The notes under the pieces: model-generated | Databases searched by the model: none | What the model was told of the DNA's origin: nothing | What the model saw: the letters and a program-made list of their open reading frames with translations, nothing else | Assembly (NCBI RefSeq): GCF_040938485.1 | Contig: NW_027271251.1 | Location: forward strand, 1,426,001-1,490,000 | DNA: 64,000 bases | Direction: 5' to 3' | From: Diadema antillarum | Taxonomy: Eukaryota | Translations under genes and position numbers: made by a program | Shown: piece after piece, positions 14,104 through 61,102 of the stretch | Layout of the letters: each line of letters starts with the position of its first letter | How positions within the stretch are numbered: position 1 is the stretch's first letter

Positions 14104-14401
14104 ATGGGGAATAAGGCCTCTGCCTCGGCGAGCATAAGCGTCGAGGCATCGGCTGAGGCCGATGTGGCGGCGGGGGAGCCAGTGAAGAAGAAGAGGCGCC
14201 TCAGTTTCAACCGCGTCCTCAATGCCTCATTCCGTCGATCAGGCCGGGGTCGACGGAGTAAGCGCAAAGCAGGACGCAGTGACGAAGGGGGCGCTAAAAT
14301 CAGCGTTGGAGCCGAGGCACCGAAAGTCGACATGGACATCGGAACGCCAGACAGCACTAAAATCGGAGTGGGCGGCAACCTCGGTTTGGGGGCAAATGCT
14401 G
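14104..14401 (+). CDS. Coding exon 1 of the AHNAK-like gene (MGNKASASAS...LGANAG), with an N-myristoylation signal and a basic cluster
   Basis: ATG is in good context (AGCATGG), with an in-frame stop upstream at 14077-14079. The region is CpG-rich. The peptide (EAPKVDMDIG, GVGGNLGLGANAG) matches the composition of the giant exon. The donor G|gtaagc at 14402 is phase 1. Confidence 0.75.
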
Positions 14402-32147: not shown

Positions 32148-32321
32148 GTGCCGGAGCAAGTGCAAGTGGCGGAGTTGGTGTTGGAGCTGGAGGTGGTGTT
32201 GGAGCTGGGGCGGGAGCCGCAGCCAGGGTAGGAGTCGGTGGTGGGGCCGGTGGCGTAGGCAAGGCGCCTCTGGCCATTGACGAGACAGCGCAAGTTCAGC
32301 CAGACCTCGATACTGACGCAA
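32148..32321 (+). CDS. Coding exon 2 (174 nt, phase 1-1), Gly/Ala/Val-rich: GAGASASGGVGVGAGGG...PDLDTDA
   Basis: Acceptor cttctgtttag at 32147 and donor A|gtaagt at 32322. The exon is a GC-rich open frame embedded in AT-rich intron. Confidence 0.85.
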
Positions 32322-35256: not shown

Positions 35257-35348
35257 GTGCCGGAATGTCAGCAGAGGGGTCAATTGGTGGCGCTTTGCCT
35301 TCAGCTTCTGCCAGCTTTGGATTGCCATCGGCATCGCTCTCCGTCGGG
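35257..35348 (+). CDS. Coding exon 3 (92 nt, phase 1-0): SAGMSAEGSIGGALPSASASFGLPSASLSVG
   Basis: Acceptor tttttctgtag at 35256 and donor GGG|gtaaga at 35349. The LPSAS motifs recur in the giant exon. Confidence 0.8.
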
Positions 35349-36429
35349 GTAAGATTTTCCCAACATGTTTCCCTTGTCAGTCGACTGAAGTTTTGTTGGG
35401 AGGAAATAATTTGCAATTTTGTTACCTTTTTGCTTGAGGGAACAATCCTCTGAGAGTTTTGTTAACTATGGATATTTTCGAAGAGAAATATACTACTCGA
35501 GACCTTGTTTATTAAAGATATGAATTACTGGTTCAGGGTTAATCGCAGCACTGATTTGCAATACAAAATAAAATATTTTGAATTCATTCTGGGGTCCTGC
35601 TCTGAGAAAAGTACTCTGTCAGACAAAGAAAAAATGTGTGTTGGGAAAATGAATGCACACGTAGAGCTAAAGATATGTCCTTTGGCCCCTTCAGTAAGGT
35701 ATTGATGATGAACCTTACCACATTCATCTATTGTAAACTAGAAGTATGGTGGGAGAAAAAAAGAATCCCTGTACTGTTCAATGAATGCATACTTTTTTTT
35801 TCAATATGCTCATTGATATACTAGAAACCACAACCATCAGTGCTGCCTCCTACACCAGTGAAAAAAGGGCATCATGATAGGGTATCTTGTTTTTCACAGA
35901 TAGGTGCATTCATTGGTTATTTGAGTCTAGTTTGGCTTGATGGAGTATTGTTAAATCCTTGAGATTCATCTCGATATATATTTAGTTGATTCCCCTGCTC
36001 TCTACACAGCTGATCTTAAACATTTGTAGAGCTAAGTAGTGCAAAATTGTGCATGCCAATCAGAAATTCAAAGTTCAGAGATATCAAAACATTTTTATGT
36101 ATTAGTATATATGTCAAATATAGGACGGGCAATTTGTTTCTCCACTGATATCAGCTTCTTAGCCTGCTGATATTTTTACATTTAGTGTTGATATGTCTGT
36201 GAGTACACTCAACAGGATCTTCAGCTTTTCAGAAGCCTCCATATCCCTTTTCAAGAATTTGATTTTGTGAGGTCATATGTAATGATATTTATTATACAGC
36301 CCAATTTTGAAAACATCCCACTTCAATCAGGTACCAAAATTCTATGGGCTGATGGTCTGTCTGAGGATACAGGATGTAATTGTAATTCAAATGTGATGTA
36401 CCTTTTGTGTTGTACCTTTTCTGTTGCAG

Positions 36430-38805
36430 GGGGGAGCAGATGCTGATGCAGACCTGTCGGCTGGAGCAGGCATCGGTGTCAGTGGAGATGCTCCATCAGC
36501 CAAAGTTGACCTGGGAGGTGCACAAGATGTTAATGTAAACGTCGGTGCTGCTGTGGATGCCGATGTCAAAGCACCAAAATTGAGTGGTGGAAAAAAGAAG
36601 AAAGGTTCACTGCCACGAGGATTTTTCAAGAAAGGTGGAGATGCCAAAGTAGAAGGGGACATTGATGCCAATGCTTCAGCAGCCCTACCTGATACAAATG
36701 CTGATGTCTCACTTGAATTGGGTGGCAAAGCCAAACCTCGCAAAAGGAAACGGCCAGGATTTTTTGCAAGATTAGGTTTTGGAGGGGACTCATCATCATC
36801 TTCATCTTCATCTTCGTCAAGTGACTCTTCTGATGAGGAGGGTGCAGGGAAGGTCAAAGTCAGAGGGCCTGCACTTTCTGGTGGTATTGGAGGAAATGCC
36901 AGAGGAAGTGGAGGATATTCATTACAAGGACCAGATGTTGGTGCATCAGGAACCATTGATATGCCAGGAGCTGCCACTGGTGGACTTAATGTAAATGCTC
37001 CAGATGTTGACATTGATGCATCCATGAGCAAACCAGAAGCGGATGCTTCCATTGGAATGGGAAAAACAAAGAAACCAAAAGGAGGAAGATTTGGATTCTC
37101 TATGCCAAAGTTTAAGTTTGGTGGCGCAGGTGGAGGAGACATTGACACTGGTGTAAAAGCTGATGTTCCAAGTGCTGATGTCAGAGTCGGTGGGGATAGG
37201 AATATTGCTGGCTCTAAAGATATTGGAGTTGTAGTTCCTGGTGGAGCAGGACAAATTTCAGGAGATGTTGATGTCAAACAAGCACAAGGAGATGCAGACA
37301 TAGGTGGGGATGTGAAGGGAGGGCTAAAATTTGGAGTGAAGCTCCCATCTTTTTCTGCAGACAAACCCAACGTTTCAGGAGATCTAGATTCACATCTACA
37401 AGCAGGCAATATTAATGTCAAAGGAGATATTCCTTCAGGAGGAATTGATGGAGGTATCGATGCAAGTAGCAAATTGCCATCTGCCGATGTTCAGGGGGGA
37501 GATGTAGACATTCCATCAGCTGACATGAAAGGTGGCTTAAAAATTGGGGGAGGAGATGGCGTTGGACTTGATGTGAATGCTCCAAAAGGCAGCATTGGAC
37601 TTGCTGGTGATGCTAACCTTGATGTTGGAGGGAGGGGTGCTGGAGTAGATGTACCCTCAGGAGATCTTGATGGAAGCATATCAGGTGGTGTGAAAATGCC
37701 GTCTGGAGATTTTGACATCAGTGGAGGAATCAAAGCTCCTAAAGGTGACCTTGATTTTGGAAGAGGGGGAGACATTGGAGGTGTAGTAGCCACTGGAGGA
37801 TCTGGAAATGCAAACTTGCCATCAGTAGGTGCAACAGGAGGTATAGGTGCATCAGTTTCAGGCTTGCCTGCAGGTGGAGGTGGAGTTGAGATATCTGGAC
37901 CCAAATTTGGCATTGGTGGTGCTGGAGGAATGGACATGGATATCCCTTCTGGAAAAGTGCAGGGTGATGCTGGTATAGATGTGAAAAGGCCAGATCTGAA
38001 AGGTGAAATTGATTTACCAGATGCCTCTTTACCTTCAGGGGGAGTAAAAGTTGATGCACCAAGTGCTGGTTTTGGAGTTTCTGGTCCTCACGTTGGTGGG
38101 CATGTAAGGCCTGCTGAGGTTGATGTTGATGGAGAGATGGACGTTGATATCAAGCCAAAGAAAAAAAAGAAGCGAGGAGGCTTCAGTTTCAAGTTTCCAA
38201 AGTTCAACTTTAACTTTGGAGGAAGTGGGGATGGAGATGGTGGTGCTGGTGCAAAGATGGATGTTGATGCTGACATGAAAGTTAAGGGCAGAAGTGCTGG
38301 TGATGTTGACATTGGTGTTGCCAAGCCAGAAGTGGATGTTGGTGTAAAAGCTGCAAAACCAAGCATTCATGCTGGAGGTGACATAAGTGGAGGCCTGGCA
38401 GTCGGGGGCCCAGATGCCAGTTTACCAAGTGGAGATGCTGATATTTCTGTGAACAGACCTGACATCGGAGCTGATGGGGAAAAGAAAGGAGGAATTGGCT
38501 TTGGTCTCAAAATGCCAAAGTTCAAAGGTCCTCACTTTGGTGGAGGAGGACATGGCAGTGGTGATATCGATGTGGATGCAAACATCAAAAAACCTGATGT
38601 TGATGTTGAAGGTGATGTCAAGCTTCCCTCTGGTGGCATTGAAGGAGGTGTAGACATAAATGCCAAAGGACCAGATGCTGATCTGTCTTTGGGTGGACCT
38701 GACGTAGACATGTCTGGGGGAGGAGACATCGATGCGAAAGGTAGTGGTAAGAGCAAAGGAGGCTTTGGCTTTGACCTGAAAATGCCCAAGATAAAGGGAC
38801 CCTAA
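36430..38805 (+). CDS. AHNAK-like: Giant exon, 5' segment (791 aa): AHNAK-like low-complexity region plus the first repeat unit, ending at a premature TAA caused by one extra base
   Basis: Acceptor ccttttctgttgcag at 36429 (phase 0). This is the long ORF 36424-38805 of the track. It ends mid-repeat at KMPKIKGP-stop. Confidence 0.9.
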   Translation, partial: GGADADADLSAGAGIGVSGDAPSAKVDLGGAQDVNVNVGAAVDADVKAPKLSGGKKKKGSLPRGFFKKGGDAKVEGDIDANASAALPDTNADVSLELGGKAKPRKRKRPGFFARLGFGGDSSSSSSSSSSSDSSDEEGAGKVKVRGPALSGGIGGNARGSGGYSLQGPDVGASGTIDMPGAATGGLNVNAPDVDIDASMSKPEADASIGMGKTKKPKGGRFGFSMPKFKFGGAGGGDIDTGVKADVPSADVRVGGDRNIAGSKDIGVVVPGGAGQISGDVDVKQAQGDADIGGDVKGGLKFGVKLPSFSADKPNVSGDLDSHLQAGNINVKGDIPSGGIDGGIDASSKLPSADVQGGDVDIPSADMKGGLKIGGGDGVGLDVNAPKGSIGLAGDANLDVGGRGAGVDVPSGDLDGSISGGVKMPSGDFDISGGIKAPKGDLDFGRGGDIGGVVATGGSGNANLPSVGATGGIGASVSGLPAGGGGVEISGPKFGIGGAGGMDMDIPSGKVQGDAGIDVKRPDLKGEIDLPDASLPSGGVKVDAPSAGFGVSGPHVGGHVRPAEVDVDGEMDVDIKPKKKKKRGGFSFKFPKFNFNFGGSGDGDGGAGAKMDVDADMKVKGRSAGDVDIGVAKPEVDVGVKAAKPSIHAGGDISGGLAVGGPDASLPSGDADISVNRPDIGADGEKKGGIGFGLKMPKFKGPHFGGGGHGSGDIDVDANIKKPDVDVEGDVKLPSGGIEGGVDINAKGPDADLSLGGPDVDMSGGGDIDAKGSGKSKGGFGFDLKMPKIKGP

Positions 38806-41800
38806 CTTTGGAGGAGGAGGACGTGGGGGTGGTGATATTGATGTGGATGCAAACATCAAAAAACCTGATGTTGATATAGAAGGTGATGTTAAACTTCCCT
38901 CTGGTGGCGTCGAGGGAGGTATAGACGTAGATGCCAAAGGACCAGATGCTGATCTGTCTGTGGATGGACCGAACTTGGATGTGTCCGGCGGAGGAGATAT
39001 TGATGTGAAAGGCAGTGGCAAAAGCAAAGGAGGGTTTGGCTTCGGCCTGAAAATGCCAAAATTTAAGGGACCCAACTTTGGAGGTGGAGGACATGGCAGT
39101 GGTGATATTGATGTGGATGCAAATATAAGAAAGCCTGATGTCGATGCAGATATTGCCAAGCCAGAAGTTGATGTGAATGTCAAGACGGCCAAACCTGACC
39201 TAGATGTAGGGGGAGGAGTCGCACTACATGCTGGTGGGGACATGGATGTGAAAGGGCCAGATGTTAGTGCCTCTGTGGATGGTCCAGACATGGATTTTGA
39301 CGGAAAGGGAAAAAAGAAGGGAGGATTTTCCTTTGGTGTCAAAATGCCCAAGTTCAAAGGCCCTAATTTTGGTGGAGGAGGACGTGGCGATATCGATGTA
39401 GATGCAAGCATAAAAAAACCTGATGTTGATGTTGAGGGTGATGTCAAGCTTCCCTCTGGTGGCATTCAAGGAGATGTAGACATAAATGCCAAAGGACCAG
39501 ATGCTGATCTGTCTGTGGATGGACCTGACTTAGATGTGTCTGGAGGAGGAGATGTTGACATAAAAGGCAAAGGGAAAAAGAAAGGAGGGTTTGGCTTCAG
39601 CTGGAAAATGCCCAAGTTCAAAGGGTTCAACTTCGGTGGAGGAGCTGATGCTGATATTGATGTAGATGCAGATGTCAAGAAACCAGACATGGACATCAAG
39701 ACAGATGCCAACCTTCCATCTGGTGGCATTGAAGGAGGTGTAGACGTAGATGTCAAAAGACCAGATCCTGATTTATCTGTAGATGGTCCTGATGCAAAAA
39801 TTTCTGGTGGAAGAGATGTTGACATAAAAGGCAGTGGCAAAAGCAAAGGAGGCTTTGGATTTGGCCTGAAAATGCCCAAGTTTAAGGGACCCCACTTTGG
39901 CGGAGGAGGACATGGCAGTGGTGACATCGATATGGATGCAAACATAAAAAAACCTGATGTTGATGTTGAAGGTGATGTCAAGCTTCCCTCTGGTGGCATT
40001 GAAGGAGGTATAGACATAGATGCCAAAGGACCAGATGCAGATCTGTCTGTGGATGGACCTGACTTGGATGTGTCAGGTGGAGGGGACATCGATGTGAAAG
40101 GCAGTGGTAAAGGCAAAGGAGGCTTTGGATTTGGCCTGAAAATGCCCAAGTTCAAGGGACCTCATTTTGGAGGAGGAGGACATGGCAGCGCTGATTTGGA
40201 TGTCAATGCGGATATTGCAAAGCCAGAAGTTGATGTGAATGTCAAAACAGCCAAACCAGACCTAGATGTAGGGGGAGATGTAAAACTACCATCTGGAGGA
40301 CTTTCACTAGATGCTGGTGGGGATATTGATGTGAAAGGGCCAGACGTTGATGCTTCTCTAGATGGTCCAGACATGGATGTCTCTGGTGGTGTGGACATGG
40401 ATGTTGATGGAAGTGGGAAAAAGAAAGGAGGAATTGGCTTTGGTCTCAAAATGCCTAAGTTCAAAGGTCCTCACTTTGGTGGAGGAGGTCATGGCAGTGG
40501 CGATATCGATGTGGATGCCAACATCAAAAAACCTGATGTTGATGTTGAGGGTGATGTCAAGCTTCCCTCTGGTGGTATTGAAGGAGGTGTAGACATAAAT
40601 GCCAAAGGACCAGATGCTGATCTGTCTATTGATGGACCTGACTTGGATGTGTCTGGTGGAGGTGACATTGACATGAAAGGCAATGGTAAAAGCAAAGGAG
40701 GTTTTGGTTTCGACCTGAAAATGCCAAAGTTCAAAGGACCCAACTTTGGCGGGGGAGGACATGGCAGTGCTGATTTGGATGTTGATGCGGATATTGCCAA
40801 GCCGGAAGTTGATGTGAATGTCAAGACGGCCAAACCTGACTTAGATGTAGGGGGAGATGTAAAACTACCATCTGGAGGACTTGCACTTGATGCTGGTGGA
40901 GACATTGATGTGAAAGGGCCAGACGTCGATCTATCTGTGGATGGACCCGACTTGGATTTGTCTGGCGGAGGGGACATCGATATGAAAGGCAGTGGTAAAG
41001 GTAAAGGAGGGTTTGGCTTCGACCTGAAAATGCCAAAGTTCAAGGGACCCAACTTTGGCGGGGGAGGACATGGCAGTGCTGATTTGGATATCGATGCAGA
41101 TATTGCCAAGCCGGAAGTTGATGTGAATGTCAAGACGGCCAAACCTGACTTAGATGTAGGGGGAGATGTAAAACTACCATCTGGAGGACTTGCACTAGAT
41201 GCTGGTGGGGACATTGATTTGAAAGGGCCAGACATTGATGCTTCTCTAGATGGTCCAGACATGGATGTCTCTGGTGGCGTGGACATGGATGTTGATGGAA
41301 GTGGGAAAAAGAAAGGAGGGTTTTCATTTGGCGTTAAAATGCCAAAGTTCAAAGGTCCCCACTTTGGAGGAGGAGGACGTGGTGACATCGATGTGGATGC
41401 AGACATTAAAAAACCTGACATTGATGTTGAGGGAGATGTCAAGCTTCCCTCTGGTGGCATTGAAGGAGATGTAGACATAAATGCCAAGGGACCAGATGCT
41501 GATCTGTCTATTGATGGACCTGACTTGGATGTATCCGGTGGAGGAGATGTTGACATTAAGGGCAGAGGAAAAAAGAAAGGAGGGTTTGGTTTTGGCCTGA
41601 AAATGCCAAAGTTCAAAGGACCTCACATTGGAGGAGGATTACATGGGAGTGGTGATGTCGATGTGGATGCAAACATAAAAAAACCTGATGTTGACGTTGA
41701 GGGTGATGTAAAGCTTCCCTCCGGTGGCATTGAAGGAGGTATAGACGTAGATGCCAAAGGACCAGATGCTGATCTGTCTGTGGGTGGACCTGACTTGGAT

Positions 41801-44800
41801 GTGTCTGGTGGAGGAGATATTGATCTGAAAGGCAGTGGTAAAAAAAGGAAAGGATTCAGTTTTAAACTGCCAAAGTTCAAGTTTCCTCACTTTGGAGGGC
41901 ATGGCAGTGCTGACATTGATGTGGATGGGAAAGTAAAACAGCCAGACGTTGATATTGAGGGTGACGCCAACCTTCCCTCTGGTGGCATTAAAGGAGGTAT
42001 AGACGTAGATGCCAAAGGACCAGATGCTGATCTGTCTGTGGGTGGACCTGACTTGGATGTGTCTGGTGGAGGAGATATTGATGTAAAAGGCAGTGGCAAA
42101 AGCAAAGGAGGCTTTGGATTTGGCCTGAAAATGCCCAAGTTTAAGGGACCCAACTTTGGAGGAGGAGGACATGGAGGTGCTGACATCGATATGGATGCAA
42201 ACATCAAAAAACCTGATGTTGATGTTGAGGGTGATGTCAAGCTTCCCTCTGGTGGCATTGAAGGAGGTGTAGACATAAATGCCAAAGGACCAGATGCCGA
42301 TCTGTCTGTGGATGGACCTGACTTGGATGTGTCTGGTGGAGGGGACATTGATAGGAAAGGCAGTGGTAAAGGTAAAGGAGGTTTTGGCTTTGGCCTGAAA
42401 ATGCCCAAGTTTAAGGGACCCAACTTTGGAGGAGGAGGACATGGAGGTGCTGACATCGATATGGATGCCAACATCAAAAAACCTGACGTTGATGTTGAGG
42501 GTGATGTCAAGCTTCCCTCTGGTGGCATTGAAGGAGGTGTAGACATAAATGCCAAAGGACCAGATGCCGATCTGTCTGTGGATGGACCTGACTTGGATGT
42601 GTCTGGTGGAGGAGATATTGATGTGAAAGGCAGTGGCAAAAGCAAAGGAGGCTTTGGATTTGGCCTGAAAATGCCCAAGTTTAAGGGACCCAACTTTGGA
42701 GGAGGAGGACATGGCAGTGCTGATTTGGATGTCGATGCGGATATTGCCAAGCCAGAAGTTGATGTGAATGTCAAAACGGCCAAACCTGACCTAGATTTAG
42801 GGGGAGATGCAAAGCTACCATCTGGGGACATTGATGTGAAAGGGCCAGATGTTAGTGCCTCTTTGGATGGTCCAGACATGGATTTGAATGGAAAGGGGAA
42901 AAAGAAGGGTGGATTTTCATTTGGTGTCAAAATGCCCAAGTTCAAAGGCCCTAATTTTGGTGGAGGAGGACATGGCGATGTTGATGTCGATGCAAACATC
43001 CGAAAACCTGATGTTGATGTTGAAGGTGATGTCAAGCTTCCATCTGGTGGCATCGAAGGAGGTGTAGACATAAATGCAAAAGGACCAGATGCCGATCTGT
43101 CTGTGGATGGACCTGACTTGGATGTGTCTGGTGGAGGGGACATTGATAGGAAAGGCAGTGGTAAAGGTAAAGGAGGTTTTGGCTTTGGCCTGAAAATGCC
43201 CAAATTTAAGGGACCCCACTTTGGAGGAGGAGGACATGGAGGTGCTGACATCGATGTGGATGCCAACATCAAAAAACCTGACGTTGATGTTGAGGGTGAT
43301 GTCAAGCTTCCCTCTGGTGGCATTGAAGGAGGTGTAGACATAAATGCCAAAGGACCAGATGCCGATCTGTCTGTGGGTGGACCTGACTTGGATGTGTCTG
43401 GTGGAGGGGACATTGATAGGAAAGGCAGTGGTAAAGGTAAAGGAGGTTTTGGCTTTGGCCTGAAAATGCCCAAATTTAAGGGACCCCACTTTGGAGGAGG
43501 AGGACATGGAGGTGCTGACATCGATGTGGATGCCAACATAAAAAAACCTGACGTTGATGTTGAGGGTGATGTCAAGCTTCCCTCTGGTGGCATTGAAGGA
43601 GGTGTAGACATAAATGCCAAAGGACCAGATGCCGATCTGTCTGTGGATGGACCTGACTTGGATGTGTCTGGTGGAGGAGATATTGATGTGAAAGGCAGTG
43701 GCAAAAGCAAAGGAGGCTTTGGCTTTGGCCTCAAAATGCCCAAATTTAGGGGACCCCACTTTGGAGGAAGAGGACATGGGAGTGGTGATATTGATGTGGA
43801 TGCAGACATAAAAAAACCTGATGTTGATGTAGAGGGTGATGTCAAGCTTCCATCTGGTGGCATCGAAGGAGGTGTAGACATAAATGCCAAAGGACCAGAT
43901 GCCGATCTGTCTGTGGATGGACCTGACTTGGATGTGTCTGGTGGAGGGGACATTGATAGGAAAGGCAGTGGTAAAGGTAAAGGAGGTTTTGGCTTTGGCC
44001 TGAAAATGCCCAAATTTAAGGGACCCCACTTTGGAGGAGGAGGACATGGAGGTGCTGACATCGACGTGGATGCCAACATCAAAAAACCTGACGTTGATGT
44101 TGAGGGTGATGTCAAGCTTCCCTCTGGTGGCATTGAAGGAGGTGTAGACATAAATGCCAAAGGACCAGATGCCGATTTGTCTGTGGATGGACCTGACTTA
44201 GATGTGTCTGGTGGAGGAGATATTGATGTGAAAGGCAGTGGCAAAAGCAAAGGAGGCTTTGGATTTGGCCTGAAGATGCCCAAGATTAAGGGACCTCACT
44301 TTGGAGGAGGAGGACATGGAGGTGCTGACATCGATGTGGATGCCAACATCAAAAAACCTGACGTTGATGTTGAGGGTGATGTCAAGCTTCCCTCTGGTGG
44401 CATTGAAGGAGGTGTAGACATAAATGCCAAAGGACCAGATGCCGATCTGTCTGTGGATGGACCTGACTTGGATGTGTCAGGTGGAGGAGACATTGACATG
44501 AAAGGAAGTGGTAAAGGTAAAGGAGGGTTTGGCTTTGACCTAAAAATGCCAAAGTTCAAGGGACCCAACTTTGGCGGGGGAGGACATGGCAATGCTGATT
44601 TGGATATCGATGCAGATATTGCAAAGCCAGAAGTTGATGTGAATGTCAAGACGGCCAAACCTGACTTAGATGTAGGGGGAGATGTAAAACTACCGTCTGG
44701 AGGTGTTGCACTAGATGCTGGTGGGGACATTGATGTGAAAGGGCCAGATGTTGACACTTCTCTGGATGGTCCAGACATGGATGTCTCTGGTGGTGTGGAT

Positions 44801-45420
44801 GTAGATGTTGATGGAAGTGGGAAGAAGAAAGGTGGATTTTCATTTGGTGTCAAAATGCCAAAGTTCAAAGGCCCTCACTTTGGAGGAGGAGGACGTGGTG
44901 ACATCGATGTGGATGCAGACATTAAAAAACCTGACGTTGATGTTGAGGGTGATGTCAAGCTTCCCTCTGGTGGCATTGAAGGAGGTGTAGACATCAATGC
45001 CAAAGGACCAGATGCTGATCTGTCTGTGGATGGACCCGACTTGGATGTGTCTGGAGGAGGAGACATTAATGCAAAAGGCAGTGGTAAAAGCAAAGGAGGA
45101 TTTGGCTTCGGCCTGAAAATGCCCAAGTTTAAGGGACCCCACTTTGGAGGAGGAGGACATGGAGGTGGTGACATTGATGTGGATGCAGACGTCAAAAAAC
45201 CTGACATTGATGCAGAAGGTGATATCAAGCTTCCCTCTGGTGGCATTGAAGGCAGTGTAGATATAAATGCCAAGGGTCCAGATGCTGATCTGTCTGTCGA
45301 TGGACCTGACTTGGATGTTTCTGGTGAAGGAGATATTGATTTGAAAGGGCCAAAACTGAAAGGACGTGGAAGTGGCAAAAAGAAGGGCAAATTTGGCTTT
45401 GGACTAAAAATGCCTCACTT
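38485..45420 (+). repeat. Coding tandem array 1: about 26 AHNAK-like units. The main unit is 270 nt/90 aa, with ~88-aa and ~103-aa variants.
   Basis: tggcctgaaaatgccc recurs at 42121, 42391 and 42661 (270-nt spacing). I count 26 KMPK/KLPK/KMPH anchors by hand from 38511 to ~45410. Confidence 0.95.
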
Positions 45421-48400
45421 TGGATTCGGTGGGAATGGTGATGCAGAGATTGATGGGGACAAGCTAGATATCGATGCCAGTGTTAAAAAGCCGGTTGTCA
45501 ATGTTGGAGGCAACTTAGACCTTCCAAAGGCTGAAGGAGATATATCTGGACCTAATCTGAATGTTGATGGCCCCGATGGAAAAGTCAATATTACAGGTAA
45601 CATTGGAGGAGACGCTGACATCAACATAAAGCCAGAAACTGACATTAGCATCAAAGCTGAAAAACCAGACCTAGACATTGGAGGTAAGGGTAGTCTTGGA
45701 GGAGAAGTGTTGACAGGCAATGTAGGAGCTGATCTTGATGGCCCCGATGCTGATTTGGAAGCAGATTTTAAGGGAACCAAAGGGAAGAAAGGAAGCAAAG
45801 GAAAAGGAAAATTCAAATTTGGATTGAACCTTGGGACACCTAGCTTCAAACTTGGTGGTAAAGGACATGAACCAGATGCAAATCTGTCAGGAGGAGCTGA
45901 TGTAGATGGTCCAGATGTACATATTTCAGCCCATGGAAAAGCAGATGGCCCAGACATATCGCCTCGTGGAGATTCAAACTTGCCTTCTGCTTCAGTTTCA
46001 GGCTCTGTAGATGCTCCAGATTCAGGCTGGGGTTTTGGAAAGAAAAAGAAGTACAAAATTTCTGGAGGTAGCAAGAAAGATAAAGGGTTTGGCATAGGAG
46101 GCAAATTCAAAGTAGGAGGTGATGGAAGTGGAGATGCATCTCTCCATGCACCAGACGTAAACATAGGTGGAAATGTGGATGGTGATGGATCCATCACTGT
46201 TGATGGGAAAAAAGACATCAGTGCACCAGATGCAGACATAAAGTTAGGTGTGAAAGGAGGCAAGAAAAAGAAGAAAAAGGGCAAAAAATTCAGATTAGGA
46301 GGCTTCAAACTCGGGTTTGGTGGCAGTGATGAACACACTTCATCATCAGAGTCCAGTTCCAGTTCCAGTTCTGATGAAGGAGATGGCAAGGGTGGGTTTG
46401 GATTTGGATTCGGAGGTCGAAAAGGAGCAGGTGACATTGGTGCTGGGCTGTCTGTAGATGTCAAAGGACCTGATGTTGACGCAAGTGGAAATGTTCCACA
46501 AGGGAAGGGAGGATTGTCCGTGGACAAACCAGATGTTAGCATAGGAGGAGGAGGCATAAGTGGTGGTTTTGGACTTGGAGGAAATGTGGACATTGACAAA
46601 CCTGATGTTGATGTAGATGGCAATCTGCGTGGACCATCTGCTGGGCTATCTGTAAATGCCCCTGATATTGCCGGCGGAATTGGAAAAGCTGGTCTGGGAG
46701 GTGTACTCCCATCAGGAAGTCTTTCCCTTGGTGGAGGTGATGTAAGTGGGCCTGAAGTCAATATTGAAGGCAAAGGAGATCTGAGTGGTGGCATTGGAGG
46801 AATAGGAGGCATTGGAGTTGGCATGGGCGGTGCTGCATCATTACCTGATGGCAGCGCTTCCTTGCCCAGTGCTGACTTGGGTGCTGGAGGTAAAGCAGGG
46901 CTAGAGATTGGAGGTGGTGGCCTTGATGGTGCTGGAGCTGGACTTGATGCAGATATTGCTATTCCAAAAGGAAATCTTTCTTTTGGAACTAGTGGAGGAA
47001 TAGCTGCACCCGCGGGAGATCTGTCAGTGGAAAAACCAGAATTTGACATTGGTGGAAAAGCTAGTCATGACTTGGATGTTGATATCAAAAAGCCAGACGG
47101 TCCAGACGCGCAGGTAAACCTGGGTGGAGGTGGCTTTTCACTAGGTTCTGCAAAGCTAGAGGCAGGGTTAGATGTAGTGAAGCCAGAAGCTGATATCAAT
47201 ATCAAGTCAAGCCGACCTGATATAGGTGTTGATGGGAATGATGGTGTTAATGTAGAAGCTCCTGATGTGGACTTAGATATTGAAAAGCCAAAAGCTGATA
47301 TTGGATTTGGCATTGGTATTGGTGGCAAGAAGAAGGGCTCTGGCAAGAAAGGCAAAGGTGGAGGCTTTCACTTTGGCAAAATGAAATTAGGTGGTGGAGG
47401 AAAAGGACATGTTAACGGTGATGCAGAACTACCTGACCCAAGTGTATCTGGGAAGATTGCTGCACCCGATGTATCTGGTGACCTGGAAGGAGATGCCAAT
47501 CTGAAAGCAACCACAGAAGTACCAGGTTTAAATGTGACAGTTGATGTACCAGATAAGGATATTGATGTAAAAGGACCAGAACTAGATACACCATCAGGTG
47601 GTATTGGATTTGGCTTTGGAAAAAGAAGTAAAAAGGGAGGATCTGGAAAGAAAGACAAGAAAGGGAAATTCAAAATCGGTGGCAAACTAGGCTTTGGTGG
47701 CTCTGGTAGTGCAGATGTTGACCCTGAAGCAGATATCAGCTTGCCATCAGGAGAAGTAAGTGCTGACATAGATACATCTGCTAAACTGGAGGGTGACTTG
47801 GATATCAAGACAGCCAAGCCAAGCATCGGAGGTGAGGCAGAACTCAAAGCACCAAATATCTCACTTGATGGTGGAGCTGATGGTAACCTAGACATGCCTT
47901 CAGATGGAGTGAAAATTGGATCAGGTGGCAAAATTAAGGGCAAGGGCAAAAAGAAAGGTAAAGGAGGCTTTGGCCTTGGAGGCCTGAAGATTGGCTTTGG
48001 AGGCAAAGATACATCTTCTGACTCCAGTGATGAAGGGAAAACAGGACTTAACATTGGACTCAAGGGACCAGATGTAAACCTTGATGATGTAAATGTAAAT
48101 GGGGACAGTGGACTAAAAGTAGGTGGAGATATTAATGCTCCATCTACAGATGTTAATATTGGAGGTGGTCTTGACATGGGTGGAGGAGCTGATGTATCTG
48201 TAAAGCCTAGTGCTGACATAAATGTGCGCTCCAACAAGCCAGAGATGAATATTGGAGGTGCTATCCTGGGTGGAGATGTGAAAGAACCTGATATGGATGT
48301 AAAAGGCCCAGAAATTGACATTCCATCTGGTGGAATTGGCTTTGGAATTGGAAAGAAAGGAAAAACGGGATCTGGCAAAAAGGACAAGAAGGGCAAATTC

Positions 48401-51400
48401 AAAGTAGGTGGCAAGTTTGGATTTGGCTCTGGAGAGGCAGATGTAACTCCTCCATCAGTGGACATTGAAGGTGATATTGATGCCGATGGTAAAGGGGGTG
48501 CAGTTCCTGAGGTAGATGCTCCTGAAGGTGGCTTTGGCCTGAAGTTTGGGAAGAAAAAAGGAAAGAAAGATGGATCTGGAAAGAAGGACAAGAGTGGCAA
48601 GTTCAAGATAGGAGGAAAACTTGGATTTGGTGCTTCAGGAGGTAACAACATAGATGTAAAGGAACCTGAAGGAGCCGTCTCTCTACCATCAGCAAAAATT
48701 GACATTGGCGGGACAGATGCAGATGCTGGGCTACATATAAAACCTGAAGTTGATGCCACCATTAGATCCAGCAAACCAGATGTTGATGGGGATGTTGACA
48801 TCAAACTACCGGAGAAACCAGACATTAATATTGGAGGTGTTGGCAAACTTGATGGGGGTAGGGGTATAGATGTCAATGTTGGAGGAGTCGGCATGGATTT
48901 TGACAAAGCAAACATGGCAATTGATGGAAAAGGTGGCCTTGAAAGCAATGTTGGACTTGGTGGAGTGGATGTTTCTGCAGATGGTGGCAAACAGGATTTT
49001 AATCTTGGTGGAGTAAGTGGTATAGATGTCAATATGCCTGATGTGAAAGTGGGAAAAATTGAAGGAGGACTTGGGGTGGGTGGTGATGTGGATCTGAATG
49101 TTGATGGGGCTGTGACTGGACCCGATATCAAGGAAGAGGCAGATGGCAAGGGGAAATTTGGCTTCGGATTTGGATTTGGAAAATCAAAGGACAAATCAAG
49201 CACTTCATCAAGCAGCAGCAGTAGTAGTAGTAGTAGTTCAGACTCCAGTGATTCCGAAGGCAAGAAGAAACACAAAAGACACAAAAAGAAAAAGAAAGGC
49301 AAAAAAGGATTTGGATTTGGATTTGGATTTGGAGGGAGTGGGGATGCTGAGAAGGAGATTGATATTGGAGGCGGAGTTGATTCCTCTGGAAAAGGAAGCA
49401 TAAAGCCTGGTTTTGAAATTGATATGGAAAAACCAGATTTTAAACCAGAAGGAGGGATGAGTGTTGATTTTGGCGGTGGAGTGGATGTTCCCAGTGCAAA
49501 GATAGATGGTGAAAAATCAAATTCACAGATAGGTGGCTTTGGCGTAAATATTGGAGGAGGAGTAGGAGGTTTAGGCTTTGATGTCAAACCAAATGTTGAA
49601 GTTGGAGAGCATGAGGGAAAGGGTACAGGAATTGGAGGAGATGCTGGAATGGACTTCAATGCTGGATCTGGAATGAGGGTGGATAGTGACAAGCCAGATG
49701 TGAGCATTGGCAAACCTGAAGGTAGCATTGGTGGCAACTTGGGAGCAGGCTTTGGAGGAGGTCTTGGCGGAAGCACTGGTGGTAGTCTTGGAGGTGCTGG
49801 AGTGAGCTTAGATATTGACAAGCCAGATGTCAACATTGGCAAACCTGAAGGTAGCATTGGTGGAAACTTTGGAGCAGGCATTGGAGGAGGCCTTGGCGGA
49901 GGTGCTGGAGTGAGCTTAGATATTGACAAGCCAGATGTCAACATTGGCAAACCTGAAGGTAGCATCGATGGAAACTTGAGAGCAGGCATTGGAGAAGGTC
50001 TTGGTGGAGGTGTTGGAGTGAGCTTAGATATTGACAAGCCAGATGTCAACATTGGCAAACCTGAAGGTAGCATTGCTGGCAACTTGGGAGCAGGTTTTGG
50101 AGGAGGTCTTGGCGGAAGCACTGGTGTTAGTCTTGGAGAAGGCGCTGGAGGGAGCTTAGATATTGACAAGCCAAAAGTCAACATAGGCAAACCTGAAGGT
50201 AGCATTGGTGGAAACTTGGGAGCAGGCTTTGGAGGAGGTCTTGGTGGAAGCACTGGTGTTAGTCTTGGAGAAGGCACTGGAATGAGCTTAGATATTCAGA
50301 AGCCAGATGTCAACATTGGCAAACCTGAAGGAAGCATTGGTGGAGACCTTGGAGCAGGCATTGGAGGAGGTCTTGGCGGAGGTGCTGGAGTGAGCTTAGA
50401 TATTGAGAAGCCAGATGTCAACATTGGCAAACCTGGAGGTAGCATTGGTGGAAACTTGGGAGCAGGCTTTGGAGGCGGTCTTGGTGGAGGCACTGGTATA
50501 AGTCTTGGAGAAGGCGCTGGAGGGAGCTTAGATATTGACAAGCCAGATGTCAATATTGGCAAACCTGAAGGTAGCATTGGTGGAAACTTTGGAGGAGGCA
50601 TTGGAGGAGGTCTTGGCGGAAGTGCCGGAGCGAGCTTAGATATTGACAAGCCAGATGTCAATATTGGCAAACCTGAAGGAAGCATTGGTGGAAACTTGGG
50701 AGCAGGCTTTGGGGGAGGTCTTGGTGGAAGCACTGGTGTTGGTCTTGGAGAAGGCGCTGGAGTAAGCTTAGATATTGACAAGCCTGATGTCAACATTGGC
50801 AAACCTGAAGGAAGCATTGGTGGAGACCTTGGAGCAGGTATTGGAGGAGGTCTTGGCGGAGGTGCTGGAGTGAGCTTAGATATTGACAAGCCAGATGTCA
50901 ACATTGGCAAACCTGAAGGTAGCATTGGTGGAGACCTTGGAGCAGATATTGGAGGAGGTCTTGGAGGAGGTGCTGGAGTGAGCTTAGATATTGACAAGCC
51001 AGATGTCAGCATTGGCAAACCTGAAGGTAGCATTGGTGGAAACTTGGGAGCAGGCTTTGGAGGAGGTCTTGGTGGAGGCACTGGTGTTGGTCTTGGAGAA
51101 GGCGTTGGAGTGAACTTGGATATTGACAAGCCTGATGTCAACGTTGGCAAACCCGAAGGTAGCATTGGTGGCAACTTTGGAGCAGGCATTGGTGGAGGTC
51201 TTGGCGGAGGTGCTGGAGTGAGCGTAGATATTGACAAACCAGATGTCAACATTGGCAAACCTGATGGTAGCATTGGTGGAAACCTTGGAGCAAGCATTGG
51301 CGGAGGTCTTGGCATTGGCACTGGAGCTGGTCTTGGAGAAAGCGGTGGAGTGAGCTTAGATGTTGACAAGCCAGATGTCAACATTGGCAAACCTGAAGGA

Positions 51401-54400
51401 AGTGTTGACGGGAACTTTGGAGCAGGCTTTGGAGGAGGTCTTGGCGGTGCAGATGTCAACATGCCAGATATCAATGCTGGAGGTGTCTTTTCTGGTCTTG
51501 GAGGTGTTGGAGTGAATGTTGATTCTGTCAAGCCAGAGTCTGATATCAGTGTGAAAGCTCCATCACTGTCAGGAGATGGAGATGCCAATGTCAGCTTAGG
51601 TGGTGGTATCTCTGCAGATAAGGATTTTTCTTCCAACATTCCATCAGCATCCATTGGTGGCAGAGATGGAGCTGCTAATGTAGACATTGGAGGTGGCATA
51701 GGCTTTAGCATAGGCGGAGTAGGTAGTGCTGATGTGGCAGGTGATGCTGGTGCAGATGCAGGTGCTGCTTTCAAATTAGGAGTACCAGAAGGCAATATTA
51801 GTGTGGGAGGAAGCACAGGAATTGAAAAAGATGCAAAGCACAAGAAACACAAGAAGGGGAAAAAACAACATAAAAAAGATAAGGACAAGAAGGAGAAGAA
51901 AGAAAAGAAGGAGAAGAAAGAAAAGAAGGAGAAAAAGAAAGGATTTAGTCTTCTTGGAGCTGTCGGCATTGGAGATGATTCATCAAGCTCTTCCTCCTCA
52001 TCATCATCATCTTCTGACTCAGATGACGGCTTCTTCTCGAAGATCAAAAGTGCTGTTGGACTCTCTTCTGATTCTGATAAAGAAGACAACCCTAACTCAA
52101 ACAACAACAATAGCAACCTCTGCAATGTCAACAACAACAATTCCGAGGATGGTCCAGAAGAAGAAAATTATAACAACAATGCCAATGATGATGAAGCTGG
52201 AGCTGTTGGTGGAGACAACAAACATTCGAAACTCGATGGGAAGCATAAAAAGGAGTCTACCGACAAGGTTAAGAGGCGAGGTTTTGGAAAGCTCTTTGGA
52301 GGCAAGAAGAGGTCACGCGATGTCATGCTGGAAATTCCAGATCAATCAGCAGATGGAAGACCTAGTGACGAGCAGAGGAGACCTCTAGCAGAAATTCAGG
52401 AAAGCACAGAGAAATTGCAATCACAGCCAGTGGCTGCAGAACCTCCACAGTACTCAAAAGCAGAATTTCTTGCACACTCCAATGCACCAGAAGTGGAAGT
52501 GCCCAAATATAAAAATAAGAAAAGGAGAGCACCTCAACCCCCTTCTGAAAGACCTGCCACAGTAGAAGACTCCATATCAGAGGGTTCCTGGCCATCAACA
52601 GCTTCCTTAGAATCAATGTCATCAGCAGCATCGAAAATAAGAACATCCCTAACTTCTCAGCAGCTTCAAGACAGGAAAATACTAACAAGAGAGTCTTCAG
52701 TGTCTTCAGATGTAATGGTAAGTTCTTCCTATGGTGAAGTTGCGTGTGAACACCCTCATCCTGCACAACCCTCCCCAGTGGTAGAAAATGCACATGTGTT
52801 GTCTGTCGAGTCTGTTCCAGTCACTTGCCCCAGTGTCACCTCCCCCTTGCTGACAACTGGTCATAAAGACGAGCAAAGCAAGCATGGCAGCAATATGCAT
52901 GAAATTTATGAAGTTGTCAAGAGTATGCCCCTTCCCTTTGGTGCACCACCCCCTAAACCAAAACGTGTGCATGTTTCTGCTGAAACTGACCCCCTTGATG
53001 AAAGTACTGCTGTGTGTGATATGTTAGATAAGTCTTTTGCAGTGCCTGAACAAATACCTTCTAGTCAGTCTGTTGTAGAAGAATCATCTCTTCCAGGTAT
53101 GGATATACATGCAGCTGCAAACCAACCCAAACCAACAAGTGGACTCCATTTGAAACCTGACAAATGGCAATCAAATTCCCGTGATTCTCTTCTTGGCGAG
53201 ATCCTCTTTGAATACTCCAGTGGAAATGTGTCTTCCCCATCAGAAACTGTGAATGTGTTCCCATCAGAGGATGTGGGCATCTCTCCAGTGCACTTGCCTG
53301 AGGTTGTGAAAATGCCTAACATCCCAAAGGAGGAGATAAAGAGTGAACTGCCTTCCATCACCATGGAGGAAGCATCTCCAAATGAATTGCAGCCAAGTGA
53401 GACTACCAAGCTCACAGGGGAAATAAGCACCATAGATGACGATGTTGACTTGCCTTGTCCTGAAAATCAGGAAGAGGTTAATGAGATACAAGATGGTGAT
53501 TCTCAGCCTACTATCCGGCGAAAGTCAATATCCCTAAAGAGTCATGATAGGGAAACAGAAGGAATATCTCTTGCTGTGCAAATGGCTCGAGGAGCTGCTG
53601 TACTGAAACGTGACCGCACAGCTGACAACAGGAGATTGCTTCGGGAGGGACTGTCTCAGTTGATGGGTGCTCCAATGGACATGGTTGGTTTCAAACCAAA
53701 AGCAGATTTTGAGCCTGTGAATGATGTTGGAAATGATAATGAAGGACTGAAAGTCTCACGAGAAGTTGCACAAAACAGTATTGCAAGTAATCATAACAAC
53801 CAGAAGAACCCACAGGAAGTTGCACAAGACAGTGTTCTGAGTGATCATGGAAAACAGGAGAGCTCACAGGTAGTTGCAGAAGATATTGTCATGAGTGATC
53901 TTGGAAAACAGGAAAGCTCACAGGAAGTTGCACAAGACAATGTTGAGAGTGGTCATGAAGAACAGAGGGGCTCACAAGTTGTCGAACAGGACCATGTTGC
54001 AAGTGATCATGAAGAACTGAACGACACACAAGATGAAGCAACTGGTAACATGAAGGTTAAGTCACAGCTATATTTTTCTGAAGAGAAAAGACTTTCAACT
54101 GAATGTGGAGAGTTGTCAAAAAGAAGCAAGCATAATGGAGAGAAAGTTGCAAAAATCATGGTAGATGATCGTGAAAACAAAGATGGTCTAGATGTCATCA
54201 CAAGTTCAGATGTGCTGAAAACACAAGGAACAGAAGAGCAAGAATGCAGGCAACCTGATTCACTAGATCAGACACAATCACCCTCACCTGCTCCCAAGAA
54301 AAGTGCATGGGACATTGTTCGAAGTAAATACAGCAGTGACTTCACTTCAAAACGTGATGTTGATCAAGGATCCACTGGAAGAGGAAAGCATTTGACGCAG

Positions 54401-60068: not shown

Positions 60069-60220
60069 NNNNNNNNNNNNNNNNNNNNNNNNNNNNNNNN
60101 NNNNNNNNNNNNNNNNNNNNNNNNNNNNNNNNNNNNNNNNNNNNNNNNNNNNNNNNNNNNNNNNNNNNNNNNNNNNNNNNNNNNNNNNNNNNNNNNNNNN
60201 NNNNNNNNNNNNNNNNNNNN
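60069..60220. other. Assembly gap (152 N)
   Basis: Run of n. Confidence 0.99.
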
Positions 60221-60960: not shown

Positions 60961-61102
60961 NNNNNNNNNNNNNNNNNNNNNNNNNNNNNNNNNNNNNNNN
61001 NNNNNNNNNNNNNNNNNNNNNNNNNNNNNNNNNNNNNNNNNNNNNNNNNNNNNNNNNNNNNNNNNNNNNNNNNNNNNNNNNNNNNNNNNNNNNNNNNNNN
61101 NN
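60961..61102. other. Assembly gap (142 N)
   Basis: Run of n. Confidence 0.99.

What the first reader, a model, noticed from the sequence alone, without database searches (positions are those of the whole stretch)
38797..38812. Single +1 frame break in the giant exon at CCC-TAA-C: error, null allele or slippery-stop switch between 979-aa and ~6,960-aa products
Seen: GGA CCC TAA CTT TGG A, where sister units read GGA CCC AAC TTT GGA or GGA CCT CAC. Removing one base restores G-P-N-F and fuses the two ORFs. It is the only break in 20 kb. Established: +1 ribosomal frameshifting often occurs at a codon followed by a stop (antizyme UCC-UGA), and a tRNA-Pro on CCC can re-pair on the overlapping CCU. 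Inference: a +1 shift here would regenerate the consensus repeat and give short and giant isoforms. The simplest explanation remains one extra C in a short homopolymer, in a gapped assembly of a repetitive exon.
Basis: partly seen in the sequence, partly recalled or inferred. Interest (0 to 1): 0.7.

Follow-up and report, generated by a model that had tools for sequence, protein, structure and literature searches.

The report
Assembly slip in giant sea-urchin gene
The single frame break in this 20-kb AHNAK-like exon of the sea urchin Diadema antillarum is private to one contig of a draft assembly that keeps both haplotypes. The other haplotype and another animal's reads are in frame there, so it is most likely a consensus error and not a frameshift switch.

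Summary
At 38797-38808 the window reads GGA CCC TAA CTT, and this is the only break between an 802-codon and a 5,986-codon open frame.

It is not a property of the gene:
- A second copy in the same assembly (contig C456, 99.07% identical over 38 kb) is the other haplotype. It is in frame here (K-F-K-G-P-N-F-G).
- A contig from a conspecific sequencing run (X1) covers this very unit. It is 99% identical, while paralogous units reach at most 88.6%. It reads CCC CAC (G-P-H-F), with one C where the window has TA.
- The two odd letters equal the other haplotype's letters in the same two columns, which suggests haplotype cross-talk during consensus or polishing.
- The genome is D. antillarum GCA_040938485.1. 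It was built from HiFi reads at about 11x per copy, polished with Racon, with both haplotypes kept. The published QV of 44.5 means about one error per 28 kb, or about 0.7 errors expected per copy of this exon.
- The exon is under clear coding constraint on both sides of the break.

Verdict: assembly error about 0.75; private null allele about 0.2; programmed +1 frameshift 0.02 or less. The source animal's own reads over the site could not be obtained.

The parts
38803..38804 (+). The lesion: TA in the window where the in-frame form of the same unit has one C (CCC TAA C against CCC CAC). It creates the TAA stop and a +1 frame change.
   Evidence: an X1 contig of 209 nt covers 38660-38869 and differs only by 38803 left out and 38804 A>C; paralogous units are at most 88.6% identical to that stretch.
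38791..38989 (+). A 200-nt patch where the two haplotigs differ at 34 positions, although they are 100% identical just upstream. The window carries the unit's own sequence. The other haplotype carries a gene-conversion copy of the unit at 39347-39550.
   Evidence: the C456 patch is 98% identical to 39347-39550, while the window patch is at most 88% identical to any other unit; an X4 contig over 38941-39033 differs from the window at five places, as many as C456 does there; the two that one search lists (38971, 38972) carry C456's letters.
36430..56755 (+). Giant last coding exon of an AHNAK-like gene. It holds about 24 units of 270 nt (38.2-45.3 kb), then 108/132-nt units (49.7-51.5 kb), then a non-repeat tail. 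It is broken once, at 38803.
   Evidence: E 3.8e-292 to 1e-170 against annotated AHNAK/AHNAK2, 31-35% identity; coding constraint.
14104..14401 (+). Predicted exon 1. It starts MGNKAS and holds a KKKRR basic patch; the donor is GTAAGC.
   Evidence: Sequence signals only; no RNA evidence.
32148..32321 (+). Predicted exon 2.
   Evidence: for the splice signals; the S. purpuratus protein P0135 carries matching residues.
35257..35348 (+). Predicted exon 3.
   Evidence: P0135 carries the matching stretch ending LPSASLSVG.
38119..38124 (+). In-frame tandem duplication GTTGAT, private to the window's haplotig.
   Evidence: absent from X1, X3 and X4; absent from C456.
49804..49831 (+). 28 nt present here but missing from the other haplotig. 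This is that copy's own single frame break.
   Evidence: C456 is open for 4,493 codons through the 38803 site, then changes frame..

Best explanation
The break is most likely a base-level consensus or polishing error in contig C363 of the uncollapsed Diadema antillarum draft assembly GCA_040938485.1. The real gene is one continuous AHNAK-like reading frame of about 6,960 codons. At this unit it reads K-M-P-K-I-K-G-P-H-F-G-G-G-G (GGA CCC CAC TTT).

The error sits 13 nt inside a 200-nt tract where the animal's two haplotypes suddenly differ by 15%, because the other haplotype carries a gene-conversion copy of a neighbouring unit. The two wrong letters, T and A, are the other haplotype's letters in those same two columns (CCT AAT). 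This fits reads of one haplotype leaking into the consensus of the other.

Shown: the lesion is absent from the sister haplotig and from a conspecific run, the exon is under coding constraint, and the expected error rate matches. Inferred: that the lesion arose in assembly or polishing rather than in the animal.
For: 1. The sister haplotig (C456, 99.07% identical over 38 kb including non-coding DNA) is open through the site for 4,493 codons.

2. The X1 contig (209 nt, depth 294 against 293 for the unique flank) matches the window's unit exactly, except that 38803 is deleted and 38804 is A>C, giving CCC CAC in frame. Paralogous units are at most 88.6% identical, so it is this unit.

3. The assembly is identified by its exact size of 1,754,659,819 bp. 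It was made with hifiasm from HiFi reads at a modal 11x per retained copy, patched with RagTag using ONT reads, and polished with Racon using MiSeq reads. BUSCO shows 84.4% duplicated genes. The QV of 44.5 means about one error per 28 kb, which predicts about 0.7 errors in a 20.3-kb exon copy. One break is seen per haplotig, at different places.

4. Coding constraint. Between the haplotigs there are 42 indels in 17.7 kb of non-coding DNA, 33 of them not multiples of 3. The 20.3-kb exon has only 5, three of which are 6 nt. Downstream there are 16 synonymous and 16 non-synonymous differences over 4,163 and 13,795 sites, so pN/pS is about 0.30. This holds only in frame 2.

5. The T and A at 38803-38804 equal the C456 letters in the homologous columns.
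Against: The source animal's own reads over the site were not seen. Run X3, probably the source sample, had no contig on 38684-38911, and only one reads call was allowed.

X1 is probably a different animal. It therefore shows that the normal allele is in frame, not that this contig is wrong.

The window's haplotig carries another private variant that looks real, the GTTGAT duplication at 38119, so it may be a genuinely distinct haplotype.

A substitution next to an insertion is not the classic HiFi homopolymer error.
Confidence: 0.75

Rival explanations
1. The lesion is a real, private or rare frameshift allele on one haplotype of the sequenced male. It would truncate the protein at 979 aa and probably expose the mRNA to nonsense-mediated decay.
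For: The window haplotig has a second private variant that looks real, the GTTGAT duplication absent from C456, X1, X3 and X4. The species has 2.52% heterozygosity. A 20-kb repetitive exon is a large mutational target. No source-individual read was seen that contradicts the base.
Against: The other haplotig also has a single frame break, a 28-nt deletion. If both were real, the animal would have no intact copy of a gene that shows strong purifying selection. The published error rate alone predicts about one error per exon copy. The odd letters match the other haplotype's letters.
Confidence: 0.2
2. The site is a programmed +1 ribosomal frameshift at CCC-UAA-C. tRNA-Pro would re-pair on CCU, giving a 979-aa product and a ~6,960-aa product.
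For: The heptamer has the formal look of a +1 site: a P-site codon that can re-pair in +1, followed by a 0-frame stop. The downstream frame is intact and constrained.
Against: The site is not conserved even within the species. The sister haplotype and run X1 read straight through in frame with no stop. None of the other 23 unit junctions listed has it. The 120 nt downstream fold no better than shuffles (z -1.08). An intact downstream frame is equally expected from an error or a recent mutation.
Confidence: 0.02
3. The break is real but bypassed by splicing inside the exon (an exitron). GGTAAG donor-like sites recur in every unit (K-G-S-G-K-S-K).
For: Donor-like GGTAAG lies at 38746-38751, just upstream of the break.
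Against: No GT..AG joint over the site appeared in any run. The two joints seen were a 21-nt-sided AA..AT contig chimera and a paralogous unit of another species. None of the runs laid is known to be RNA.
Confidence: 0.01

Closest known systems
Consensus or polishing errors in uncollapsed, highly heterozygous long-read assemblies (short-read Racon polishing of repeats)
   Same: A single-base-scale lesion, private to one contig. It sits in a tandem repeat at the edge of a haplotype-divergent tract. Its frequency matches the published QV. The wrong letters match the other haplotype.
   Different: Not proven with the source animal's reads. The change is a substitution plus an insertion rather than a plain homopolymer length error.
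Programmed +1 frameshift sites (antizyme UCC-UGA, bacterial RF2 CUU-UGA-C, Euplotes AAA-UAA); established knowledge
   Same: The form of the heptamer: a re-pairable P-site codon followed by a 0-frame stop.
   Different: Known sites are conserved across species and usually have stimulatory elements or a regulatory logic. This one is absent from the sister haplotype and from a conspecific animal, and has no evident stimulator.
AHNAK / AHNAK2 giant-exon proteins of vertebrates, and 'AHNAK-like' proteins annotated in Nematostella, Daphnia, mites and Schistosoma
   Same: One giant coding exon of tandem units with K-M-P-K-F-K and G-P-D-V-D motifs. Hits are 31-35% identical, with E values down to 3.8e-292.
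   Different: The units are 90 aa, whereas vertebrate AHNAK has 128-aa units (from memory). No PDZ domain was found in the window. The predicted start, MGNKAS plus a basic patch, looks like a myristoylation signal. The scores are inflated by repetition.

Membership tests
Programmed +1 ribosomal frameshift site | Shift site conserved among alleles and orthologues | tested here: not met
   The sister haplotig reads GGC CCT AAT TTT in frame. The conspecific run X1 reads GGA CCC CAC TTT in frame on the same unit.
Programmed +1 ribosomal frameshift site | P-site codon able to re-pair in +1, followed by a 0-frame stop or a slow codon | tested here: met
   CCC UAA C at 38800-38806. This is by inspection only; such heptamers arise by chance from any one-base insertion.
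Programmed +1 ribosomal frameshift site | Stimulatory RNA element near the site | tested here: not met
   The 120 nt downstream fold at -28.6 kcal/mol, z -1.08, and 23 of 200 shuffles fold as well. Upstream elements were not examined.
Programmed +1 ribosomal frameshift site | Both protein products made | not testable with these tools
   No proteomic or ribosome-profiling data were within reach.
Assembly consensus error | Reads of the assembled individual contradict the base | tested here: inconclusive
X3, probably the source sample (depth 23.7), has no contig on 38684-38911.
Assembly consensus error | Lesion private to the contig and absent from other copies and individuals | tested here: met
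Assembly consensus error | Frequency compatible with the measured assembly accuracy | tested here: met
   QV 44.5 means about one error per 28 kb (PMC13511894). One frame break per 20.3-kb exon copy is seen.
AHNAK family | Giant single exon of tandem repeat units with K-M-P-K-F-K-type motifs, and significant similarity to annotated AHNAK proteins | tested here: met
AHNAK family | N-terminal PDZ domain | tested here: not met
   tblastn with the first 400 and last 500 residues of six AHNAK proteins found nothing outside the repeat exon. Pfam found nothing in predicted exons 1-3. A PDZ exon outside the window is not excluded.

The most novel reading that the evidence does not exclude
The TA-for-C lesion is a true allele in the sequenced male, and ribosomes shift +1 at CCC-UAA-C often enough to rescue the giant AHNAK-like protein. 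That would be a newly arisen frameshift tolerated through incidental +1 slippage, not an evolved switch.
Probability: 0.02. Interest if true: 0.55.

Novelty: not a real feature. Interest (0 to 1): 0.1.

Why it matters
The main value is as a caution. This public D. antillarum draft keeps both haplotypes and has about one base error per 28 kb, so a single frame break in a long exon is expected and should not be read as recoding or as a pseudogene. Comparing the two haplotigs is a quick in-assembly control.

The gene itself is a 6,960-codon AHNAK-like protein with no PDZ domain found in the window and a myristoylation-like start. It is poorly modelled in sea urchins: the S. purpuratus model is a 319-aa fragment named 'vesicle-associated protein-like'. 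It deserves proper annotation.

Tried and rejected
- **Run X5 (another species).** A loose end reads ...GGGACCCC before 38805, which would also give CCC CAC. Paralogous units reach 92.4% identity over that 66-nt stretch, so the contig may be a paralogue. I count it as weak evidence only.
- **X5 joint 38702->39008 with 34 letters between.** It joins frame 1 to frame 2 in phase. However, its letters (..A-K-I-S-G-A-R-D-A-D-I..) match the unit type seen near 39800. It is a paralogous unit laid on both sides, not evidence.
- **X1 contig over 39245-39361 with 7 differences.** I tested whether it was the C456-type junction. It is not.
- **Protein searches for Diadema or other urchin orthologues crossing the site**. 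None are held. The best echinoderm hit is a truncated S. purpuratus model covering only the N-terminus.
- **Pfam** on every part of the protein found no family.
- **Earlier scan notes.** Nothing exists near this place. Other notes supplied the species name.
Full report
**What is there.** The window reads GGA CCC TAA CTT TGG at 38797-38811. Frame 1 is open from 36397 to 38802. Frame 2 is open from 38795 to 56752. No other stop interrupts the 20.3-kb stretch. The upstream frame ends K-M-P-K-I-K-G-P-stop, and the downstream frame continues N-F-G-G-G-G-R-G-G-G-D. Of the 24 unit junctions listed, most read K-M-P-K-F-K-G-P-(N/H)-F-G-G-G-G, and this is the only one with a stop. Read through, it gives 6,962 aa.

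**What the gene is.** The exon holds about 24 units of 270 nt (38.2-45.3 kb), a zone of 108/132-nt units (49.7-51.5 kb) and a non-repeat tail. It has no Pfam family. It matches annotated AHNAK/AHNAK2 and 'AHNAK-like' proteins from sharks to Nematostella at 31-35% identity, with E values down to 3.8e-292 (the scores are inflated by repetition). The only echinoderm relative held is a 319-aa S. purpuratus model, XP_011671108.1, named 'vesicle-associated protein-like'. It is 58% identical to the start of the protein. No PDZ domain was found in the window.

**Which genome.** Earlier scan notes name Diadema antillarum. I checked this: G000 has 1,754,659,819 bases, which is exactly the size given for GCA_040938485.1 (PMC13511894). 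That assembly was made with hifiasm from HiFi reads of one male's sperm. It was patched with RagTag using Nanopore reads of two other animals and polished with Racon using MiSeq reads. Its authors later concluded that it retains both haplotypes: 84.4% of BUSCO genes are duplicated, the modal HiFi depth is 11x on the uncollapsed assembly, and heterozygosity is 2.52%. [quoted passage not shown] They state that the assembly has no gaps, so the N runs at 60069-60220 and 60961-61102 are masked. I left them alone.

**The other haplotype.** The same assembly holds a second copy on contig C456, 99.07% identical over 38 kb including introns and flanks. That copy is open from the exon start through the site for 4,493 codons. 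It reads AAG TTC AAA GGC CCT AAT TTT, in frame. It has its own single break elsewhere: 28 nt missing at the place of window 49804-49831. So each haplotig is intact where the other is broken.

**Coding constraint.** Between the two haplotigs, non-coding DNA shows 42 indels in 17.7 kb, 33 of them not multiples of three. The 20.3-kb exon shows only five, three of which are 6 nt. Downstream of the break, substitutions give pN/pS of about 0.30 in frame 2, with no such signal in the other two frames. The whole exon is therefore a constrained coding sequence on both sides of the break.

**A conversion tract beside the site.** The two haplotigs are identical for hundreds of bases up to 38790. They then differ at 34 positions in 200 nt (38791-38989) and are nearly identical again afterwards. 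The C456 version of this patch is 98% identical to the unit at 39347-39550, so it is a gene-conversion copy of a neighbour. The window's version is at most 88% identical to any other unit, so it is the unit's own sequence. Both versions occur in other animals. Run X1 carries the window type. A contig of run X4 over 38941-39033 has five differences from the window, the number by which C456 differs there, and the two that one search lists (38971 T, 38972 G) are C456's letters. The donor unit itself differs at 14 of 93 positions.

**Reads.** One reads call was allowed. A 209-nt contig of run X1 (same species label, different study from the probable source) lies on 38660-38869. It is identical to the window except that 38803 is missing and 38804 is C. 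This gives GGA CCC CAC TTT, which is G-P-H-F in frame. Its depth (294) equals that of the unique flank (293). Paralogous units are at most 88.6% identical to that stretch, so the contig is this unit. Runs X3 (probably the source sample) and X4 have no contig over 38684-38911, which proves nothing. Run X5 (another species) has a loose end that also implies CCC CAC. Paralogues reach 92.4% over that short stretch, so I give it little weight. A joint in X5 that links the two frames in phase turned out to be a paralogous unit.

**Interpretation.** The lesion is TA in place of one C. The letters T and A are what the other haplotype has in those same two columns (CCT AAT against CCC CAC). The lesion lies 13 nt inside the boundary where the haplotypes diverge. 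Reads of the other haplotype would still map across that boundary onto the identical left flank. This fits cross-talk during consensus or short-read polishing of an uncollapsed assembly. That step is inferred, not shown.

The published error rate predicts about 0.7 errors per exon copy, and one frame break per copy is seen. If both breaks were real, the animal would lack any intact copy of a clearly constrained gene. I therefore put an assembly error at about 0.75 and a real private null allele at about 0.2. The latter is kept alive by the window haplotig's other private variant, the in-frame GTTGAT duplication at 38119-38124, and by the lack of source-animal reads.

A programmed +1 shift is refuted as a feature of the gene. 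The site is missing from the sister haplotype and from a conspecific animal. No other unit has it, and no structure follows it (z -1.08). I leave 0.02 for incidental slippage on a real allele.

**Novelty and interest.** The frame break is not a biological feature worth pursuing beyond a read check. The gene, a PDZ-less and possibly myristoylated AHNAK-like giant, is a new member of a known kind and is badly annotated in echinoderms.

Noticed in passing
window 49804-49831 (C456 about 1702290): The other haplotig lacks 28 nt inside the 108/132-nt repeat zone, giving it its own single frame break. It could be an error or a real allele.
   Followed up: partly
window 38791-38989 against 39347-39550: A 200-nt gene-conversion tract between units 555 nt apart. 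It is present on the C456 haplotype and in run X4, and absent from the window and run X1, so it is a segregating conversion allele inside the repeat array.
   Followed up: yes
window 38119-38124: An in-frame GTTGAT tandem duplication (adds V-D), private to this haplotig. It is absent from C456, X1, X3 and X4.
   Followed up: partly
window 14104-14401: The predicted first exon begins MGNKAS followed by KKKRR, which resembles an N-myristoylation signal plus a basic membrane patch. No PDZ domain was found anywhere in the window, unlike vertebrate AHNAK.
   Followed up: partly
window 36387-52140, minus strand: Long antisense ORFs (up to 969 aa at 47368-50277) overlie the repeat exon. They are by-products of its skewed composition (GC skew about +0.35), not genes.
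   Followed up: no
window 60069-60220 and 60961-61102: N runs are present although the assembly's authors report zero gap length, so they are masked stretches. I did not touch them.
   Followed up: no
P0135 (S. purpuratus XP_011671108.1): The purple-urchin orthologue is annotated as a 319-aa 'vesicle-associated protein-like' fragment that ends in non-homologous residues. The giant exon is probably missed in that annotation.
   Followed up: no
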